DNA of 64,000 nucleotides from Ascidiella aspersa (Eukaryota): the NCBI GenBank assembly GCA_963924565.1, contig OZ004610.1, positions 34,162,001-34,226,000 on the forward strand, given 5' to 3'. The notes below the pieces were generated by a model. It was given only the letters and a program-made list of their open reading frames with translations, was not told the DNA's origin and did no database searches. Every line of letters begins with the position of its first letter. Position 1 is the first letter of the stretch. Shown piece after piece: positions 1,657 through 16,000 of the stretch. Both the position numbers and the translations under genes were made by a program.

Positions 1657-2933
1657 CCTTTAAATTACTGCTTTACTCAAGAAAAGCTACATTTAAATCA
1701 AGAAAAAAATGTATAAAATACCAGGAAAAGTGTAAAATAATCATTGGGTGAAAAACAGGAAAATATAAAACATTAAAAATAAAACCATAAAAACAATATA
1801 AGGCTTAAAAGATCTCCCCTGATTTTTATTTTAATTCATCTCCAGATACCACCTCATTGTGTGACCTTATTATAAAAATTAGTTTTGTCTCTAGTAGGTT
1901 GCTTTATTTATTTAAATAATATAGTTGTTTATCTTGTTAAAGCTGTTTGATTCCTTATATCCATTTAACATTATGCTTAATCTTTAATATGAAAAGTGAG
2001 TATGTTAATGGCAAGATGTTTTAAACCTGTTTATAGTTGTATACATACGACAACTTTAATATTATAATAACTCATAAATCTCAAAGTACATTAATTTTTA
2101 ATATTTAATTGTTGTCAAACTAACTACAGGCTACAGCCCAAAGACATAAGGGTTTCAATGTCTAACTTTATATTAGATTCCTTAAAAAACATTTAAAATA
2201 AAACGTAATTTGTAAAAGTTTGGAAAGCAAATTTAATACTTAAACGTAAGAAAGCCAACACAAAAAATTCTAAATGACAAAATCAGATAAATAGAATAGT
2301 CTAATATTTGTTCAATCACTTGGCACATGACTATTAATTAAAATTCATAAAAAAATTACATTTTGTTAAACAAAGTCTTATTTAAAACTTTTATGTGCAA
2401 ATCTAATTTCTGGCAATATAATCTAATTTTCAAGTTCAATGGATTTGATTGATAAGTTGGTGTGTGACTAATGTTCATTCAAAAAACACACAGTAAGACC
2501 CATAAAGAAACAATATTTAAAACAGAATCATCTGTAATACCGAAGCATTGAAAGAAGCAGAAATATCTAAGAAGGAATAAGGCCTAACCTTTTCAGATTA
2601 AGAGCTAAATGACAAATAAACCATATAGTTACAGGGTATGGGACTGAAAAGGTGTAGGCAATACAATGACTGTGTAATCGTCACAACTTTCGGAGATATT
2701 GCCCAAAACAAATCTCGGCGCGCCAAGTTCGCCCATACGATTGGGCGCCGTTTATGATTAAGTTACTCCGTAATAATAAGTAATTATAAGTTTAATTACC
2801 AAAATTATTTCCAACTATGTAAAATTTATTCGCTCGCACGTCTAAATACTCCACTGACAAACTCGATTTCTAAATTCTAATTATCTAACGGAACACAAAT
2901 ATGAGTTTAAGATGTCTTGCGTAAGTCGCTAAG

Positions 2934-3066
2934 TGTGGTGACCTAGGGATTGCTAGGTTTTTATGAACTGAATTTAAACTAAACATTACCTGCAACACAA
3001 CATGTCACAAATAAACACAGCGTAATACATAACATAGAATAAGGTACATGGCACAAATTTACCACA
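2934..3066 (-). repeat. 3' LTR of the Gypsy element (133 bp)
   Basis: Base-for-base identical to 6973-7105 by eye; TG...CA ends with 6-bp terminal inverted repeat; adjacent to the PPT. Confidence 0.97.
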
Positions 3067-3078
3067 TTTTTCCCCTCT
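3067..3078 (-). promoter_or_regulatory. Polypurine tract (plus-strand primer)
   Basis: Element-sense AGAGGGGAAAAA directly abuts the 3' LTR. Confidence 0.9.
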
Positions 3079-3149
3079 AAATAATGAAAGTACACTGTAC
3101 ACCCAACAAAAAAACATTGTTTCATTTAAACAATTTTAAGGGTTCATTT

Positions 3150-6100
3150 TTAATGAGTCCAATCCCCAAACCGTGAAGGGGGTTTATGAATTCTGGATGA
3201 ACGCCTCACTTGCAAACCAGTAGGCGAAGCAGGTGGAAACGCAAAAGGAGAAGGTGAAGTAGGAGGTAACTCATCTGTACCATGCGCCAAATCTTCTACC
3301 GATGATCTGTCCAATGCAGATTCTGGTGTAGTAACTGTAGATGGCCTAGTAGTATGGGGAGGCGAATTGGTAGAAATTGGGACTCCATTTTCAAGAGACT
3401 CGCCAAAGGATTCTGCATCTGGCAGTGGAGGGACTTCATGGTCTTCAGGGCAAGGAGCTAAATCCTGCACAGACACTGTCGATTCACGCCCCCCTGGAAG
3501 CCGAATATGTGCAAAACTTTGATTGGCTTCCAGCAAGTCTACCTCATCAACTAAGGGATCTCCTTTATTTCGCACAAATCGTCTCATCAAAACTTTTCCA
3601 GGCTGGAGCAGCCATGATGGTAATGATCTTCCCAGCATAGTTCTTCGTCCGAAGTTTAAGAAACGCTCATGAGGGGTTTGGTTTGTTGAGGTGCAAAGCA
3701 GAGATCTTACGGAATGAAGGGCCTCCACTAAGATTTCTTCCCATCTATCTTCTCCCAGACCCCTGTCCTTTAAAAGGAGTTTAACTGTTCGCCATATGGT
3801 TTGGTTCACTCTTTCACATTGGCTGTTACCAGTAGGATGATAGGGAGTAGTCCGACTTGGTACCACTCCTCTATCGGTCAAAAACTTTTTAAATTCACCA
3901 GAAGCAAAGGCTGTGCCCCGGTCACTGTGGACGAAAGAGGGTAGACCAAAAAGAGCAAAAAGTGAAGTTAGCGAAGCTATGACGGTTTTCGTAGTCATGT
4001 CAGAACAGGGAATTGCAAAAGGAAAACGGGAAAACTCATCCACCACAAAGAGAATGTAATGTCTTCTACCCCTGACAGGTCCTTTAAAATCAATGCTAAT
4101 TCTTTCCCATGGAGCAGAAGCTTTGATTAAAGACTCATTAGACTTGCGGTGAAAACGAGGTTTTACTTCGGCACAAACTTTACATTCTGCACATGTTTGC
4201 CGAACCTCATTAATAGAGTAAGGTAAGTTGCGCGCTTTTATAAAATGAAGTAGGCGTGTTACCCCAGGGTGCCCCAATTGCCTATGGATTTGGACTAGTC
4301 CAGCATTTCCCATGAAACATAGAGAAGAAATTCTTGAAAGGGCATCCGGAGCAGTGTTTAGTTTACCAGGACGGTGGTGAACGCGATATGAAAAGGCCCC
4401 CAGTTCAGCTCGCCACAGCTGGAACTTAGCATTTTTAATTTTACCTGGGCGGACAGGATCAAACATATAAGAAAGAGCACGCTGGTCAGTCAATAATGTA
4501 AAGGTGTTACCATGCAAGAAATGACTCCATTTTCTCGTAGCCTCCATAATAGCTGTAGCCTCCTTCTCCACGATAGGGTAGTTGAGTTCGCTTTTTGTAA
4601 AGGTCCGGGAGTAAAAAGCGACAGGGCGACCACATTGGTTCAGGGTAGCGGCCAGTGCAAATTGGGAGGCATCACACTCCACAGTAAAGGGTTGATAAGG
4701 ATCAATATTTTTCAGACAGGCGGAAGCCAAACTTTTTCTAAGCTCTGCAAAAGCCATAGCTTGTGGTTTAGCCAATGGGAGAGCCTTTTCCTGAATGGCT
4801 TTGACAAGGGGTCGAACCTTATCTGAAAACTGATGAACCCAACGGGCATAGTATGCAAATAGACCCACAGCGCGTCGGAGTTCAGCAAGTGTTTGAGGCA
4901 TGGGCATGTCCAAAAGTGGCTTCAACCGCTCAGGATCAGGCTGGATTTTACCAGGCTTTACCAGGTATCCCAACAGTTGAATTTCCTTCTTTGCAATATG
5001 TGACTTTTCTTCGTTGAAGGTGAGGCCTTCCTTCCCGGCAGCATGTAATAGGGCTTTAAGATTTCTGTCATGTTCCTCCTGTGAGTTTCCCACCACAGTT
5101 ACATTGTCCAGGTAGGCAAACGTTTTTCTTAACCTATATTTTGAAATGATAACATCTATCAGTCTTTGAAAAACAGATACTCCATTGGTCAGTCCAAAAG
5201 GCAGTCTTTTATACTGATATAGTCGACCATCGGCCTCAAAAGCGGTAAAAGGTCTATCTTCTTCATGCAGGGGAATCTGATGATAGGCAGAGCGCAAATC
5301 AAGCGTGCTAAAGAGTTTACCTTTAGCAACAGCATTTACTTGATCATCTATCCTGGGCAGCGGATATGCATCTAGAAATGTAAAGCGATTCACAGTTTGA
5401 GAGTAATCAATGACCAATCGACGGCGGTGATTACCACTCTTTGCAACCAAAACTTGTGCACGCCAAGGACTTCTTGAAGGTTCAATAATATCCTCTTCTA
5501 GAAGTTTTGAAACTTCCTTACGGATAAAATATTGGTCATCAGCTGAATACCGACGTGATTTTACAGCAATAGGTCTGAATCCCCTTTCTAGATCTGTAAA
5601 GAGTCTAAATGGTTTCACATTGGCTGCAGCCACACTACAAGTGCTATTATTTGGGTAAGTAGGGCAAATGTTAAGAAGAGGACGAGGACCCTTAAAGTGA
5701 AAGAATGTCCCTTTATGAAGGCCGAGAAATGATTGTCCCAGAATAACTTCAGCACATAACTCATCAACCACCTCAAATGTCAGAGAATAGCGGGATTTAT
5801 TTAGCCACAATGTTGTACAAGTAGTGCCAATTACCTCAGCTGAAGCCTTTCGTGAAGCCATACCTACTTTGGATCTTTGCCCAGAAACAGGTAAGTGATG
5901 TTCTTGACATACTCGACTATCCAAGTAACATCCAGTTGCTCCAGAATCCACCAAAGCGTTTAGCATCCTGGCACCAAGGGAGACTTTAATAAGTGCAGGA
6001 TATAAACCTGAAGGTGGATCAGGGTGCCCATTCATCATATATATGAAAGAATTTGTGATAGATGCAAAAGTAGACTCTCCACTTTCTGTTTGTGGCAGAA

Positions 6101-6923
6101 CTGAAGCCGATGTCTTGAAGGAACTACTAAATCCCTTCTTTCTTATTCTCGACAAACACTTTTTAGCATAGTGACCTTTGCGACCACAGGAGTTACAAGT
6201 GGCTTCTCTAGCTGGACAAGAGGAGCGGCCTCCAGGATGCATAGAACCTCCACAGTAGAAACAATCTTTCTTAGCTATTGCAAAAACAGTGGACTCAGGA
6301 GTCTCTGAGGCTGCAATGGTCACATTTGTAGTTTCCTTAATAAAGGTCACGGCCTCATTCCTTGCTCGTTCTAACACCAAGGCTTGATCGAAGGCTTCTT
6401 TACAGGTAACCTTATTTTTCTCAAGAAGTCTTTGTCGGATGTCGGGGGCTACCATGCCACTAATAAAGGAGTCGCGAACCATTTCTTGTCGATAAGTATC
6501 TGCATCGACATCCTGAAAATCACAGGATTTAGAAAGCTCATGCAAAGCATACATGAAATCAGTTAGGTTCTCATCCGGTTTCTGTTTTCTCACCATCAAT
6601 AAATGACGAGCTACTGTGATGTTATTTTCTTTCAGAAAAACTTTGTTAAGAGTCTCTTTAGCAGATTGAAAGGTTTCACAGGATTCTACATAGGAGTAGA
6701 GTTTATGTGATATGCCATTGACAAGGAGGTCTAATTTTTCTTCTGATGATAAAGTAATAACACCACCTGTTTCTTGGCTGGTTCCACTCCGATGGCTATT
6801 TTGTGTTTTCTCAATGGCTCGAATAAAACCATCAAATGAACGCCACCAATGTTTATACATTTTAATGGCCTCTGGGTCATTGGGATCAAGTTCCAGACGG
6901 TCTGGCCTCATCAGTCTCTCCAT
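3150..6923 (-). CDS. Gag-Pol polyprotein, 1257 aa (Gag with two zinc knuckles, aspartic protease, reverse transcriptase, RNase H, integrase)
   Basis: Knuckles CFYCGGSMHPGGRSSC and CNSCGRKGHYAKKC. Protease ALVDSGA. RT motifs LDLRSAYHQ, LPFGL and YLDN. RNase H CDAS, EKEA, TDQ, DALSR. Integrase HHCC (HRQLGH...CKVC) and DDE core (DFKGP, SDRG, CER). No frameshift, env or chromodomain seen. Confidence 0.97.
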   Translation of the reverse strand: MERLMRPDRLELDPNDPEAIKMYKHWWRSFDGFIRAIEKTQNSHRSGTSQETGGVITLSSEEKLDLLVNGISHKLYSYVESCETFQSAKETLNKVFLKENNITVARHLLMVRKQKPDENLTDFMYALHELSKSCDFQDVDADTYRQEMVRDSFISGMVAPDIRQRLLEKNKVTCKEAFDQALVLERARNEAVTFIKETTNVTIAASETPESTVFAIAKKDCFYCGGSMHPGGRSSCPAREATCNSCGRKGHYAKKCLSRIRKKGFSSSFKTSASVLPQTESGESTFASITNSFIYMMNGHPDPPSGLYPALIKVSLGARMLNALVDSGATGCYLDSRVCQEHHLPVSGQRSKVGMASRKASAEVIGTTCTTLWLNKSRYSLTFEVVDELCAEVILGQSFLGLHKGTFFHFKGPRPLLNICPTYPNNSTCSVAAANVKPFRLFTDLERGFRPIAVKSRRYSADDQYFIRKEVSKLLEEDIIEPSRSPWRAQVLVAKSGNHRRRLVIDYSQTVNRFTFLDAYPLPRIDDQVNAVAKGKLFSTLDLRSAYHQIPLHEEDRPFTAFEADGRLYQYKRLPFGLTNGVSVFQRLIDVIISKYRLRKTFAYLDNVTVVGNSQEEHDRNLKALLHAAGKEGLTFNEEKSHIAKKEIQLLGYLVKPGKIQPDPERLKPLLDMPMPQTLAELRRAVGLFAYYARWVHQFSDKVRPLVKAIQEKALPLAKPQAMAFAELRKSLASACLKNIDPYQPFTVECDASQFALAATLNQCGRPVAFYSRTFTKSELNYPIVEKEATAIMEATRKWSHFLHGNTFTLLTDQRALSYMFDPVRPGKIKNAKFQLWRAELGAFSYRVHHRPGKLNTAPDALSRISSLCFMGNAGLVQIHRQLGHPGVTRLLHFIKARNLPYSINEVRQTCAECKVCAEVKPRFHRKSNESLIKASAPWERISIDFKGPVRGRRHYILFVVDEFSRFPFAIPCSDMTTKTVIASLTSLFALFGLPSFVHSDRGTAFASGEFKKFLTDRGVVPSRTTPYHPTGNSQCERVNQTIWRTVKLLLKDRGLGEDRWEEILVEALHSVRSLLCTSTNQTPHERFLNFGRRTMLGRSLPSWLLQPGKVLMRRFVRNKGDPLVDEVDLLEANQSFAHIRLPGGRESTVSVQDLAPCPEDHEVPPLPDAESFGESLENGVPISTNSPPHTTRPSTVTTPESALDRSSVEDLAHGTDELPPTSPSPFAFPPASPTGLQVRRSSRIHKPPSRFGDWTH

Positions 6924-6959
6924 GGCGATTGGTAAAGCACAAGGTCAATGTTAACAAAG

Positions 6960-6971
6960 CAGTTCATAAAA
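6960..6971 (-). promoter_or_regulatory. Non-tRNA primer-binding site, complementary to the element's own LTR (putative self-priming PBS)
   Basis: Element-sense TTTTATGAACTG starts 1 nt after the 5' LTR and is the exact reverse complement of CAGTTCATAAAA at 7009-6998. It lacks the TGG start of a tRNA PBS. Confidence 0.85.
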
Positions 6972-6972
6972 T

Positions 6973-7105
6973 TGTGGTGACCTAGGGATTGCTAGGTTTT
7001 TATGAACTGAATTTAAACTAAACATTACCTGCAACACAACATGTCACAAATAAACACAGCGTAATACATAACATAGAATAAGGTACATGGCACAAATTTA
7101 CCACA
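6973..7105 (-). repeat. 5' LTR of the Gypsy element (133 bp)
   Basis: Identical to 2934-3066. Contains initiator-like TCAGTT (7010-7005) and an ACCTAG/CTAGGT hairpin (6997-6980). Confidence 0.97.
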
Positions 7106-10014
7106 CTAAGTAAATATTGAATTTAATTTAAACTCCACAATTGAAATACGTTACGAGATTCCTTTAATGAGTTAACGTAAAAACCCAAACATTTCAAACA
7201 CACAACTTGCTTGGCAACGAAGCAAACAAAAGACAACTTCGACGAAACGAAATCAATTTCTTTGAGTTTTAGATAAACAAAACAAACTTACGTAACTACA
7301 ACCTACGTCAGTTCTGAGAGGAGTCTATTTCAAAACAAACTCTGCCGCAATTTAGCAAGGAAACAAATTATAACCAATAATTATTGCGTTCTAGGATTTT
7401 TTTTACGTCTTTCATAAAACATTTAGCTAAATACGACGAAGAATGGGAGTTAAGAGAATGTCTACTTTTATTTGTGACGTAATTTGCTAACCGCAAAAGT
7501 GGGAGTGACCATTATTAATCGGTCATGCGTTACCCTAGCGGAAAGTTAATAACTTGAGGGGAGATTGTTATAGGAAATAACGGGATTTTAAGGAGTTAAG
7601 GCCTTAAAACACAACCTAATGATTTATCGGGGCAGCGAAACAAGACAAATATTAAACTGTTGGTCGTAATCTGTTTTACAAAAGGTAACTCAGCTAATAC
7701 TGTTCTAAACTTAAAATATAGCCAACGTTTTGGCCTAGGAAGGTTCAATACTGTAAAATTAGCCATTGTTCAAACAGGCAGTAGGATACAATTCCTGAAA
7801 GAGTCACATGATCCCGCTATATTAAGTAAATTTGCTTAACTAACTGCAACGTCTACCAAGTCTATTCGATCGCGGAAGCCTTACTGAAATATAGGCTACA
7901 TTCTGATTTTACTAAATAAGTAGGGTTTAGACGTAGTATGTATATTAAAGTTAACATAGGTAACATTTTTGAACGTTGCTAATAACTTTGATTTCATTAG
8001 TACATTTTGAAAATGATCAAAACGTTCAAAATGCGATATTCCTTGTACGCCTAACTAAAACCTCCAACCATTATGCTTTGAAGTACCGTAAGGTTTGAAT
8101 AAGCAACAGAGATGCGGTTGAACAACATACAAAAAACACTCTTATATGAAACAAAAAGTCTTGAGCTGAATGTACGCTTAGTGTAAGACATAATCTTTCG
8201 TAATATTCTGACATTTTAAATCCGCTTATAGAATACGATTAGCCATGATTGCTGAAGGATATTCCACTTAGGTCAAAGCACAAAACAAAACGGAGTTGTC
8301 TGTTGAAATATTTGATTGTTGATATTTGTTACTTAGTAGCTCATGTAAACAGGCAAGTTAATTCGCAACGCGTAACGTGAAATGCACATAATTATCGCTA
8401 GAACTTTGTATGTTTTTCCGATATCCGATATTTTGAGCAAACTATTCTTCGCTGGTATTCAGCTGTTTTCTGAAATATTCACATTTCACGGTAGAAAACT
8501 TACTCGTTTAGAAAGATACGCTGTATTATATATTTTTCAAAGCAGAGTCGCTGTTTCTGAAAGTCATTACAGCACTAAACAGTCTTTTTTGGGGGCGGAT
8601 TCTGCTCAATCACTAATTAGGCTCTGGTAAACTCCTAAACTAAACTTTCAATCTGTTTTTAACCTTACCTAAATATTTAAACATATAACCTGTTGTTATT
8701 CACCATAGTATCCGTGTGTTCAAAGTTTTTTTTCTTTCTTTTTCTACTTTGACCTGATAAAGCACGGTTGTGTGGAAGCTTGTCGAGAATGCAATACAAT
8801 TTGTGTGCAGCCTGTTCTTATGTGTTATGTAAACTTACTGACTGTACAGCACCACACTATAGCACCGAAAGCAGGTTTTATTGACAGCACAAACTCACAA
8901 AGTTCAGTCATTGCCCGGGGGTCACATCGGAATAAAGCAACAAAAAGTAAACACTTGGTACAATGGATAACACGCCACTAATAATATAGGCCTCGTGAAT
9001 GACAAGAAGCAGACATGTTTACAGAATAAAGTTTCCATCTTTTAAAAATGGGAGATGGAACTTTAGTTTTTTCCAAATTAGATTAGAAATTATACTAAAC
9101 TTAAAATTTTCACTTCAAATACAATTAAAATTGGATCACTTTAAAACGATTTTAAACAACAAGAATTTATATTTTTTTCTAAATTATGATTAGAAGTTAT
9201 ACCAAAACCAGAACTATTTTTTTTTTACCTTAAATAGTAAAGTGAGTTAGTTAGTAATATCTTATATATATTTTAGAACGTTTGTGAGTGGTCAGTCGTC
9301 AGCATGTTCGCCAGGTAGGTCGCTGGTATTTTCATACAATTCAAGATCATTTTGTAGCCTACTATATATGGAAGTGCGTTTTAGGATTTTAAAAACTTAA
9401 AAACTTCGTTAGACAAATTTAAATTTTGAAAAAAGCCCAAATTAAATAAAACAAAGAGTTAGGGTAGGCCTACACTTATTAATATAGATTGAAAACGTTG
9501 AAAGTAAATAAAAAGTTATTCGAAACGTTCAAGATGATACCTACTTCTGTCTGGGCTTTGATATTTTTATTACGTATAAATTGAAAACATTATTTAGAAT
9601 TATAACAATATTATTTGTCGTTTTGCTTTAAATCGTCAAATTAGTTAACGAGAACAATCTTAGTCGAAAGTTGCTGTCCAGGCAAGTGTAGACATGTCAT
9701 TTTAGGCCTTTAATGTTTTGAGAAGCGATAAAACTAGTTTAATATTTAACAGAAGGCAACACTTGAAGTAAACCACAATCCACAACGTCATGGAAGTACT
9801 GGTTGAATAATTATTCTAAGAATGACACTTGAGTTTGGTTTTCGTTAATCTGTAGCTCGCGCTATTTATAACATGGACCGATAAAGATTTGCGCAACTTT
9901 ATTTATTTTTGGTCACCCACCTAGATATAGGACATAGGTATTTGTCAAGTCGAGAACATAGCTTAGCTTTATCTCAGAATGTAGACTATTAAAAAAAATA
10001 AAAGTTTCACTGAC

Positions 10015-13070: not shown

Positions 13071-16000
13071 CTGAAACAAATAAAATTTGGTAAATATTGA
13101 GAAAATATTTCAAATAAACAGGAAAAATATATAGTGGAAAATCAACAGCATTTTGTTACAAAAATTTTAAGAAACACACCTATTTATTATTTGAAATTTT
13201 AAACAATGTTGTGTTATTACATTTTGCAATTTAAATTGTAATGGCAAACCAGTAGATAAACATGTATTTCAATTTAATGCGATGAAGTAATCAACGTTTA
13301 AATCAAAGATTCTTGGGACACAAAGTTATTTGCAGAGGCGATATTCTACGACAGCTAATGAGAAAATAAGAGACGATGGAGTTAGAAAAAACGCCTTTAT
13401 CGACTAATGCAAAGTACGTTGTTGTTGCTTCAAAACATGAACTGACCCGTTAACGTGGCAGACTTTTGCGAGCAGTTCACTTCGCTTGTGCTTGTTCGAG
13501 TGTTGTTCGATTCCAGTAAGTCCAACAACTGAATAGCTGCAACCTGGTTGTAAGCAGTGGAAGTGCGACGTGTTACGCTGCCTGTCAATCAAATATAGGG
13601 GGTTACGATGCCTGTCAATCAAAAAATAAGGGGTTACGGTTCAGGGTTGGCACACAATTTTTATAAAAAATGAAAGACATTTAAACACCTAAAACTGAAC
13701 CGTTAGGCGTTTTTGTTAAATAATTAAACAAACATTAAAATGGAATAGCCAACACAACAACAAATAAATGACCAAAATAAGGGGTTACGGTTCAGGGTTG
13801 GCACACAATTTTTATAAAAAATGAAAGACATTTAAACACCTAAAACTGAACCGTTAGGCGTTTTTGTTAAATAATTAAACAAACATTAAAATGGAATAGC
13901 CAACACAACAACAAATAAATGACAACTGGTTTTATAAGCACATTTATTTTTAACATATAATTCAAGCTGCACATAAAATAAATTCAATCACTAAAGATTT
14001 TGCGAAAGATACAGGGTTTTACCAAGACTTTTCAATGCGTAGATTAACTCAAAGATACTCGTAGACGAAAGATCCAAGCATGTGGCAACCCTTCCTGTAT
14101 GCTGCGATTTGCTACAGTACTTTTATTTACAGAGATTTGCTACCGTACCTGTATTTGCAGTTGTCTCTCTTGCAGTCTTCCTTCCCTCTAAACCTCTCGA
14201 ATCCAGATTGTTCCAATGTGTCAGCTTTAAGATGTTGTCTTCTGTGAGTTCCAACCTTAGCGCTGTCAGTGCATCTGGAAAGAAATATTCCGATTAAACC
14301 AGTGTTTCTCAAAGTAGGGTAACATTTTGGTATATTTAGTAGTTGCCAGACCAAACACATATTCTTATGAAAAGTGCAAAATTTTTCACAAGAGTTTCAA
14401 TAAAAAAAATAGCACTGGATGTTTTTAAACTTCATTCAAGTTTCACATAGATTTCTCAAGTCTACTTGTTTTATGACGTCACCTCTATAAAAAATAATGT
14501 AGACACTGTACACACAAACCAAATTTATTGTTTAGAGGTTCGTTTTTAAAAAGTTCAAAAATCGTGCAGTTAAGCTATGCAAGGTGATTTTTAGAGTAAG
14601 TAGAAGTACATTGGCCAATATATGAATAGAATTATAGAAGCGCCATCAAACTTTTAACTTTTAGTTTAAACAACTTATGACAAAGTTAATTTCCCAACTT
14701 ATTGACTTAGTTATGCCAATAGAAAAAAAGTAGAGCTATTCCAGTTAATTTTTCATTTTTTTACTCACTTGAAGGTGCATCTTAGGCAGTGGAAGTGTGT
14801 GCTTGCCTTGGTGTGCTGACAACCTTCCACTCCACAATCCTGTGCTGCTTTGAACCTCTTGAAGTCATCCCTCACCAAACCCGCAACCCTCTCGTGGTGT
14901 TGCTGGTGCTTGTACATGTGCGTGCGGCCAGTGAAGCGGTAATTACAACCGTCACGTGTGCAGTGGTAGTGAGACACCTGGTGGTGGAACGACATAGAAA
15001 TCTTACACGTCGAAGGGAATAGTTTTAAATATAAAAAAATTTGGCTATTTTTGGCCAAAATTTTGCCAATTTTGATCAAATCAACAAAGTTAAATTGGTA
15101 AAATATAATTTTAATCGCGAAGAAATAAACTTGTAATGTAAGTAAGTAGCTCATTAGCTCAGTGGTCAGCTCAAACGAGATAAAAATTAAAATATTTCTA
15201 ACACAATTTAAGGTAGTTAAAACAGTAATACTTTCTTTGTTAATAAAAATGTAAAACAAAAATCTAGTTTTTTTCATAACAAAACAAAACATTTAAATTA
15301 TAAAAAAAAAAATAATAAATTGGAATTAAAACGTGTTAATTCAATTCCAAGATGATGGTGAAAAGGTAAAAATTGTAAGAAGGTGAAAAAAACCTAAACA
15401 GCGATGAATCCAGAGAAATATTTAAGGCTGAAAAATCTGACAATCGATTTTATATTTTAACACTACAAGATTATGCATAATTATTTGTATTGAGTTGGGA
15501 AAATGACATTGACCAATTACACACTGGTGTGATCTCGGAATTTTTGCTTTTAAGATTGTGTTTAGGTTAGAACACGGTTTAAGAAGGCAAATTAACAAAC
15601 CATTTAGTGGAGAATTTACGGGAAAACACTTTAGTTGAAAAACCTTTAATAGTCAGTGGTGTAGGGAGTTTATCGCGGGCGAGCACTGGTGCAATTCTTT
15701 TCTAAAGTGCGCAATCCAAAAATATAATAAAAATATTTGATATTTTACCACTAAACAGTTGTAATCAGTTATGTTAATTTGGGGGCTTAGGGAGTTTACC
15801 TTGAACAGCATTGTACACTGGGGGTCGCCACAGTTCTCCGATGATTCGAATCTCTTAAATCCATCCATGACGTCATTATTGATGCGAAACTTTGCGAACA
15901 TTGAGTCGTCGATTGGTTTGGTCAGGGTCGGTCTGAAATAATGGGAGGAATGGTTCAATAGGGAATTTTATGTGGTTTCAATCTATCTGTATTGCACTTA

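What the first reader, a model, noticed from the sequence alone, without database searches (positions are those of the whole stretch)
6960..7010. Self-priming (tRNA-independent) architecture in an intact animal Gypsy retrotransposon
Seen: on the element-sense strand the LTR end and leader read tC-AGTTCATAAAA-ACCTAG-caatcc-CTAGGT-CACCACA|A-TTTTATGAACT-G. The PBS position has no TGG start. Instead it is a perfect 12-nt reverse complement of LTR positions 7009-6998, and a separate 6-bp hairpin follows immediately. The complementary stretch begins in TCAGTT, an initiator consensus. If +1 is A7008, exactly the first 11 nt of the RNA pair with the PBS. Established: fission-yeast Tf1 primes minus-strand synthesis this way, with its first 11 nt annealing to the PBS and being cut off by RNase H activity, helped by a structured leader. 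Inference: this element makes its own primer by cleavage between 6998 and 6997. It shows no chromodomain and its Gag looks unlike Tf1, so it may be an independent origin of self-priming. Self-primed Gypsy families may already be catalogued for some animals, so novelty must be checked.
Basis: partly seen in the sequence, partly recalled or inferred. Interest (0 to 1): 0.9.

Follow-up and report, generated by a model that had tools for sequence, protein, structure and literature searches.

The report
Self-primed compact Gypsy retrotransposon clade
A young 4.2-kb Gypsy-type retrotransposon has no tRNA primer site; the 12 bases after its left repeat exactly match, in reverse complement, a stretch inside that repeat, and the match co-varies in relatives from insects, nematodes and marine animals, so the whole group most likely primes its own reverse transcription as yeast Tf1 does.

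Summary
The element lies on the minus strand at 7105-2934. It has identical 133-bp LTRs, a 5-bp target duplication, a polypurine tract and one 1257-aa Gag-PR-RT-RH-IN frame. One base after the 5' LTR there is no TGG. Instead, 6971-6960 is a perfect 12-nt reverse complement of LTR 7009-6998, followed by a 6-bp hairpin. Chance gives about 1e-5.

The pairing is conserved with compensatory change. An older subfamily in the same genome carries A/T where the young one carries C/G. A sister family (56% protein identity) has a different 12-mer pair at the same place. Nine relatives elsewhere, including a leafhopper and a whipworm, have 11-17-nt perfect pairs. That makes 12 pairs and 171 bp with no mismatch or wobble. 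Six distant Gypsy families in the same genome have ordinary TGG sites and no such complement.

Tf1-type self-priming is the best reading (about 0.75). The transcript start and the cleavage were not shown, because RNA reads were too sparse.

Two further points:
- The primer stretch nearly always ends in a poly(A)-signal hexamer.
- No relative scanned, down to 34% identity, has a chromodomain. Kinship to Tf1/sushi could not be tested.

The parts
6973..7105 (-). 5' LTR, 133 bp, TGTGGT...ACCACA termini
   Evidence: Identical to the 3' copy. The borders are set by the target duplication.
2934..3066 (-). 3' LTR, 133 bp
   Evidence: 100% identical to the 5' LTR.
7106..7110 (-). Target-site duplication CTTAG, upstream copy
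   Evidence: An allele without the insertion joins 2928 to 7106 in DNA run X2.
2929..2933 (-). Target-site duplication CTTAG, downstream copy
6998..7009 (-). Putative self-primer: 12 nt of the LTR, perfectly complementary to the primer-binding position
   Evidence: Covariation.
6999..7004 (-). Poly(A)-signal-like hexamer inside the primer stretch (CATAAA here; AATAAA in the older subfamily and most relatives; ATTAAA in family B)
   Evidence: Its function as a poly(A) signal is inferred, not shown.
6980..6997 (-). 6-bp hairpin directly 3' of the putative cleavage site
   Evidence: A hairpin at the same place is predicted in most related families, with different sequences.
6972..6972 (-). Single spacer base (A) between the LTR end (CA) and the primer-binding stretch
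   Evidence: The same one-base A spacer is read in every copy with clean LTR borders; where blastn borders shift by a few bases the sequence is the same.
6960..6971 (-). Primer-binding stretch, 12 nt, no TGG
3150..6923 (-). Single open frame of 1257 aa: Gag with one CCHC knuckle, aspartic protease, RT, RNase H, integrase; no chromodomain
3067..3078 (-). Polypurine tract abutting the 3' LTR
2959..2970 (-). Copy of the primer stretch in the 3' LTR; it has no complement downstream, so its hexamer would be unpaired there
   Evidence: the LTRs are identical.

Best explanation
The element is a recently inserted member of a compact, chromodomain-less Ty3/Gypsy clade that primes minus-strand DNA synthesis with its own RNA.

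Proposed mechanism:
1. The transcript starts at or just upstream of 7009.
2. Its first 11-12 nt fold back over a short hairpin and pair with the 12 nt that begin one base after the LTR.
3. The element's RNase H cuts the RNA after the last paired base, between 6998 and 6997.
4. The freed 3' end is extended through the spacer and U5.
5. Plus-strand strong-stop synthesis then copies the attached RNA primer. This rewrites the primer-binding site from the primer in each cycle and keeps the two stretches perfectly complementary.

Shown here: the anatomy, the lack of a tRNA-type site, perfect pairing in 12 families with changes on both sides, and restriction of the feature to one clade.

Inferred: the transcript start, the cut, who makes the cut, and the rewriting step.
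For: Anatomy.

Within family A, the young subfamily has C in the LTR stretch and G in the binding stretch. The older subfamily (5' copies L009 and L011, plus older solo or 3' LTRs L022-L029) has A and T at those positions.

Sister family B (56% identity over RT-RH-IN; five copies) has a different 12-mer pair. It sits 56 nt before the LTR end and one base after it.

Nine loci from other hosts show perfect pairs of 11-17 nt whose outer parts differ. They include Macrosteles quadrilineatus and Trichuris suis.

The tally is 12 pairs and 171 bp, with no mismatch or G-U, and several Watson-Crick pair types at most positions.

Negative control: six Gypsy families of the same genome at 30-35% identity have TGG sites right after the LTR. 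None has a complement longer than 7 nt. They fall outside the clade in the tree, whose stem has support 100.

The leader leaves no room for another primer site.

The Tf1 mechanism is taken from PMC7175516 and PMC4600332.

The insertion is recent: the LTRs are identical and an allele without the insertion exists.
Against: No direct evidence for the 5' end of the RNA. Only 130 RNA reads were laid and no start site emerged.

The initiator-like motif of family A is not conserved in the other families.

The paired LTR stretch usually carries a poly(A)-signal hexamer, so pairing could serve poly(A) control as well as, or instead of, priming.

Cleavage of an RNA duplex by this RNase H is assumed by analogy with Tf1.
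Confidence: 0.75

Rival explanations
1. The pairing mainly hides the poly(A) signal in the 5' copy of R, so that transcripts are not cut short. The 3' LTR copy has no partner and stays active. Priming would then be done by something not yet identified.
For: In 11 of 12 families the LTR stretch ends in AATAAA, ATTAAA or CATAAA(A). The complement exists only downstream of the 5' LTR.
Against: It does not explain why the complement always starts exactly one base after the LTR end, which is where the minus-strand primer must sit. It does not explain why no other primer site exists. In L056 the paired stretch lies upstream of a separate AATAAA, so pairing does not need the hexamer. The total absence of G-U pairs fits copying at the DNA level better than selection on RNA folding. 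The two functions can coexist.
Confidence: 0.1
2. The transcript starts downstream of the hexamer, so the complement is in U3 and present only at the 3' end of the RNA. It would pair with the leader in cis (circularising the RNA) or in trans (on the second packaged RNA) and prime from there.
For: The transcript start is unknown. In retroviruses the hexamer can lie in either U3 or R (general knowledge). A conserved TTGCAG-type motif lies at a varying distance upstream of the paired stretch, 12-38 nt before it. In three families (A, L052, L053) its CAGGTA core stands at a near-constant 20-22 nt before the hexamer, by my hand count on the sequences. It could be a promoter element.
Against: A cut at that place would separate the 3' R and tail from the rest of the template. 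Strand transfer would then reach a dead end unless a second RNA is used. No precedent is known to me.
Confidence: 0.1
3. Chance inverted repeat, or a site for a host tRNA or tRNA fragment.
For: None beyond the AT-rich composition.
Against: Chance is about 1e-5 for one family, and the feature recurs in 12. The site differs between families and the LTR changes with it, which no shared host RNA explains. There is no TGG, and no tRNA or Rfam match in the region.
Confidence: 0.02

Closest known systems
Tf1/Tf2/Tj1 of fission yeasts and the Tf1/sushi group (fungi, vertebrates)
   Same: No tRNA-type site. A short stretch of the 5' LTR transcript is complementary to the position just after the LTR. 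A structured segment lies between them. The pairing length (11-17 nt) is like Tf1's 11 nt (PMC7175516, PMC4600332, PMC6317226).
   Different: Pfam finds no chromodomain in the window protein at any threshold, and none is on record or found in the 127 relatives checked, down to 34% identity. Pfam finds no Retrotrans_gag match in the window protein's Gag. The element is much smaller, with LTRs of 133-308 bp. The primer stretch overlaps a poly(A)-signal hexamer. Hosts are invertebrates and sharks. Phylogenetic relation to Tf1/sushi was not tested.
Cigr-1 clade of Ty3/Gypsy (Ciona intestinalis; reported in molluscs and annelids: PMC6238403, PMC8556966)
   Same: Family B is sister to a Ciona intestinalis protein with support 100. 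From memory, Cigr-1 is also about 4.2 kb with a single gag-pol frame.
   Different: No Cigr-1 reference sequence was at hand, so the assignment is provisional. The papers I could read that name the clade do not discuss its primer site.
Tcn1 clade (fungi, mosses) and TAR lineage of plant Ty1/copia, for which self-priming is predicted
   Same: Predicted from the same kind of LTR-to-leader complementarity (PMC6317226, PMC2864245).
   Different: Different superfamily or chromovirus clade, and different hosts.
HIV-1 poly(A) hairpin in R
   Same: A poly(A) hexamer in R that is held in a stem in the 5' copy (general knowledge).
   Different: In HIV the stem is local and present at both ends, and priming is by tRNA. 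Here the partner lies in the leader and is present only at the 5' end.

Membership tests
Ty3/Gypsy (Metaviridae) LTR retrotransposon | Domain order PR-RT-RNase H-IN in pol | tested here: met
   Pfam hits in that order. The best solved relative is Ty3 Gag-Pol, E 4.5e-67.
Ty3/Gypsy (Metaviridae) LTR retrotransposon | LTRs with TG...CA ends, a short target duplication, and a polypurine tract before the 3' LTR | tested here: met
Self-primed LTR retrotransposons (Tf1-type mechanism) | No tRNA-complementary site (no TGG) after the 5' LTR | tested here: met
Self-primed LTR retrotransposons (Tf1-type mechanism) | The stretch just after the LTR is complementary to a stretch of the 5' LTR, and this is conserved with covariation | tested here: met
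   12 pairs, 171 bp, all Watson-Crick. Absent from six tRNA-primed families.
Self-primed LTR retrotransposons (Tf1-type mechanism) | The complementary stretch is the very 5' end of the transcript | tested here: inconclusive
   RNA run X5 gave 130 reads and no start site.
Self-primed LTR retrotransposons (Tf1-type mechanism) | RNase H cuts the RNA duplex after the last paired base, and the short RNA stays on strong-stop DNA | not testable with these tools
   Needs biochemistry.
Self-primed LTR retrotransposons (Tf1-type mechanism) | Structured segment (like the U5-IR stem-loop) between primer and binding site | tested here: met
   Predicted folds of 11 families. This is prediction only.
Tf1/sushi chromovirus clade | Chromodomain at the integrase C-terminus | tested here: not met
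   No Pfam family at E<=10 in the last 233 aa. None on record in the 120 relatives listed. None found in 7 more distant ones.
Tf1/sushi chromovirus clade | RT/IN phylogeny places it with Tf1 and sushi-ichi | not tested
   No reference sequences could be obtained with the tools.
Cigr-1 clade | RT phylogeny places it with Cigr-1 of Ciona | tested here: inconclusive
   Groups with a Ciona intestinalis protein, but that protein is not verified as Cigr-1.

The most novel reading that the evidence does not exclude
A chromodomain-less Gypsy clade spread across animal phyla has self-priming either independently of Tf1/sushi or as an old shared trait. In it, one short motif would do two jobs. In the 3' LTR it is the poly(A) signal. 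In the 5' copy it is locked in a duplex with the leader, which silences it, and is then cut off to serve as the primer. The binding site would be rewritten from the primer in every cycle, which would explain 171 bp of perfect complementarity without a single wobble pair.
Probability: 0.3. Interest if true: 0.75.

Novelty: new member of a known kind. Interest (0 to 1): 0.55.

Why it matters
In the papers I could read, self-priming is documented only for Tf1-like chromoviruses of fungi and vertebrates and predicted for two plant or fungal lineages.

This work adds a large, compact clade with members in insects, nematodes, a tunicate, sharks and marine invertebrates. The evidence is clean covariation rather than a single complementary stretch.

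If the finding holds:
- Independence from tRNA is more widespread in animals than the literature I could read assumes.
- These elements would escape host defences that act through tRNA-fragment targeting of primer sites (the kind of mechanism discussed in PMC7472051).
- The rule 'perfect complement one base after the LTR' would be a simple annotation criterion for this clade.

The overlap with the poly(A) hexamer suggests how a 133-bp LTR can hold promoter, primer, poly(A) signal and R.

Tried and rejected
- RNA reads: too few to show a start or a poly(A) site.
- Loose read ends at 6985 (4 reads): their continuation is not in the genome. This stays unexplained.
- Initiator motif: not conserved at the 5' border of the complement in the other families, and no consistent pyrimidine-purine step either (inspection). 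It therefore cannot be used to place the start.
- Rfam and tRNA scan: nothing relevant.
- Levin laboratory primary papers: not held in the library. Mechanism details were taken from PMC7175516 and PMC4600332.
- Shark loci and a 39%-identity relative: no DNA was served.
- A repeated chromodomain-bearing frame in this genome could have given a chromovirus for comparison.
- Families at 38-50% identity in this genome (L036, L038, L039): too broken to read their 5' ends. L037 is a variant of family B.
- Earlier notes of the scan: none bear on this finding.
- L058 begins with a run of N, which was left as it is.

Full report
ANATOMY

The element lies on the minus strand of the window. Its LTRs are 7105-6973 and 3066-2934. 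They are 133 bp each and identical, with the inverted ends TGTGGT...ACCACA. They are flanked by the 5-bp duplication CTTAG at 7110-7106 and 2933-2929. A polypurine tract (3078-3067) abuts the 3' LTR.

One open frame runs from 6923 to 3150 and encodes 1257 aa. It holds a CCHC knuckle, an aspartic protease, RT, RNase H and integrase, in the Ty3/Gypsy order. The best solved relative is Ty3 Gag-Pol. The last 233 aa match no Pfam family even at E<=10, so there is no chromodomain.

A contig of DNA run X2, from the same organism, joins 2928 directly to 7106. An allele without the insertion therefore exists. Together with the identical LTRs, this dates the insertion as recent.

THE OBSERVATION

- The 12 nt at 7009-6998 in the LTR.
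- A 6-bp hairpin at 6997-6980.
- The LTR end CA at 6973, then one A at 6972.
- The exact reverse complement of 7009-6998 at 6971-6960.

No TGG follows the LTR. Only 37 nt separate the complement from the ATG.

For an LTR of this composition, the expected number of such 12-mers is about 1e-5. A looser criterion (11 nt or more, starting 0-3 nt after the LTR) was met by 41 of 200,000 shuffles.

CONSERVATION WITHIN THE GENOME

The genome holds about a dozen 5' LTR-plus-leader copies and many more 3' or solo LTRs. They fall into two subfamilies.
- The young one (97-100% identical) has CAGTTCATAAAA in the LTR and TTTTATGAACTG after it.
- The older one (85-96% identical) has CAGTTAATAAAA. It is seen in copies L009 and L011 and in the older solo or 3' LTRs L022-L029. 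Where the leader survives (L009, L011, L012) it reads TTTTATTAACTG.

This is a compensatory double change, A-T to C-G. An older, 77%-identical copy (L049) keeps 10-11 pairs including one wobble.

A sister family B shares 56% protein identity over RT-RH-IN and has five copies with 308-bp LTRs. It has TTGTTGATTAAA 56 nt before the LTR end, and its exact complement one base after the LTR.

Six further Gypsy families of the same genome were read at 30-35% identity (loci L040-L042, L044-L046, L048). They have ordinary TGG sites within a few bases after the LTR. None has a complement longer than 7 nt.

CONSERVATION IN OTHER HOSTS

The polyprotein has well over a thousand relatives at 52-62% identity, 1200-1240 aa long. 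Named hosts include Ciona intestinalis, Macrosteles quadrilineatus, Periplaneta americana, Palaemon carinicauda, Trichuris suis, Scyliorhinus canicula and Hypanus sabinus.

DNA was obtained for nine of them. Every one has a perfect complement of 11-17 nt. It lies between an LTR stretch 37-83 nt before the LTR end and the position one base after the LTR. In Trichuris the 3' LTR keeps the perfect 16-nt match, and the 5' LTR has one later mutation.

A 10-nt core (GTTGAATAAA or a close variant) is widely shared. The outer 1-7 nt differ freely and are always matched.

Over 12 distinct pairs there are 171 base pairs, all Watson-Crick. Two to five pair types occur at most positions.

In a tree of the polyproteins, all loci with this feature form one clade on a long stem (support 100), apart from the tRNA-primed families. 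Family B is sister to the Ciona protein.

HOW IT MOST LIKELY WORKS

The minus-strand primer must anneal right after U5, because that position defines the LTR end. The only partner found for that position is the element's own LTR stretch, and the two change together. A host tRNA cannot account for that.

In Tf1, the first 11 nt of the RNA pair with the binding site, and RNase H cuts between nt 11 and 12 to make the primer (PMC7175516; also proposed for Tj1 in PMC4600332).

The same scheme fits here. The start would be at or near 7009, there would be 12 paired bases, and the cut would fall between 6998 and 6997. A hairpin lies directly 3' of the cut. Predicted folds show the outer stem in all 11 families tested and an inner hairpin in most.

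The complete lack of wobble pairs suggests that the binding site is recopied from the primer during plus-strand strong-stop synthesis. Retroviral sites are recopied from the tRNA in the same way. This step is inference.

In 11 of 12 families the LTR stretch ends in AATAAA, ATTAAA or CATAAA(A). If the stretch is the start of R, the hexamer is present at both ends of the RNA. At the 5' end it would be locked in the duplex with the leader. At the 3' end it has no partner.

With the hexamer at 7004-6999, cleavage 10-30 nt downstream would fall near the LTR end. That would make U3 about 96 nt, R about 30-36 nt and U5 only a few bases.

In L056 the paired stretch lies just upstream of a separate AATAAA. 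So the pairing does not depend on the hexamer.

Whether the hexamer acts as the poly(A) signal was not shown.

WHAT REMAINS OPEN

The transcript start. RNA run X5 shows that the element is transcribed and that no reads extend into the flanks. But 130 reads do not define an end. The initiator-like TCAGTT of family A has no counterpart in other families.

If the start were downstream of the hexamer, the complement would be in U3. A different scheme, acting in trans or by circularisation, would then be needed. I rate this at 0.1, because the cut would sever the acceptor for strand transfer.

KNOWN OR NEW

The papers I could read attribute self-priming to three groups: the Tf1/sushi group of fungi and vertebrates, Tcn1-like chromoviruses, and the plant TAR lineage of Ty1/copia (PMC6317226, PMC6934838, PMC2864245, PMC7175516). 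Papers that name the Cigr-1 clade in molluscs and annelids do not discuss its primer site. Searches for self-priming in animal Gypsy elements gave nothing further.

Older subscription papers and Repbase notes could not be read, so prior mention cannot be excluded.

Among the best 150 representatives of a library-wide search, identity falls smoothly to 34-40% for full-length proteins. The seven such proteins I scanned have no chromodomain.

I could not place the clade relative to Tf1/sushi for want of reference sequences. 'Independent origin' therefore stays undecided.

VERDICT

The self-priming reading is well supported by comparative evidence, but no experiment or read data back it yet. It is a new member of a known kind, with a possible new twist in the overlap of primer and poly(A) signal.

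Noticed in passing
window 5103-5114 (minus strand), aa 604-607 of the polyprotein; P0001-P0120: The RT active-site box reads Y-L-D-N, not Y-x-D-D. Among the pattern matches tallied in the 120 listed relatives, most families have D-N and a minority D-D; family B, Ciona, Macrosteles and Trichuris have D-D. This is unusual for an RT that seems to be in use.
   Followed up: partly
window 2928/7106: A contig of DNA run X2 joins the two flanks without the element, with one copy of the target duplication. The insertion is therefore polymorphic.
   Followed up: partly
window 6985: Four RNA reads of run X5 follow the leader and LTR end up to the hairpin. They then continue with the loop in the opposite orientation and about 16 nt that are not in this genome. 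Possibly a truncated copy in another individual; unexplained.
   Followed up: partly
window 7020-7034 and the same place in L052, L053, L057, B: A TTGCAG(GTA)-like motif is conserved upstream of the primer stretch. Its CAGGTA core stands about 20-22 nt before the hexamer in three families, by hand count. It could be a promoter element.
   Followed up: no
L056:1724-1854: The 5' LTR of this relative is interrupted by a 131-nt insert whose start looks like the 5' half of a tRNA, probably a SINE. The 3' LTR is uninterrupted.
   Followed up: no
L059 (Trichuris suis KL367573.1): The 1551-aa gene model P0001 is one element with an internal 1.55-kb tandem duplication of its pol region.
   Followed up: no
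tree: Element relationships do not follow host relationships. The whipworm element groups with two sharks, family B with Ciona, and family A with an ocean-metagenome contig. This could be old lineage sorting or horizontal transfer.
   Followed up: no
G000 C2:7088752, C3:3188683, C3:3205088, C7:11228649: Four identical chromodomain matches lie in repeated open frames of 211-369 aa, possibly a chromovirus or another mobile element. They could not be fetched.
   Followed up: no
window 13623-13923: Two identical 150-nt direct repeats, one base apart (start-to-start spacing 151).
   Followed up: no
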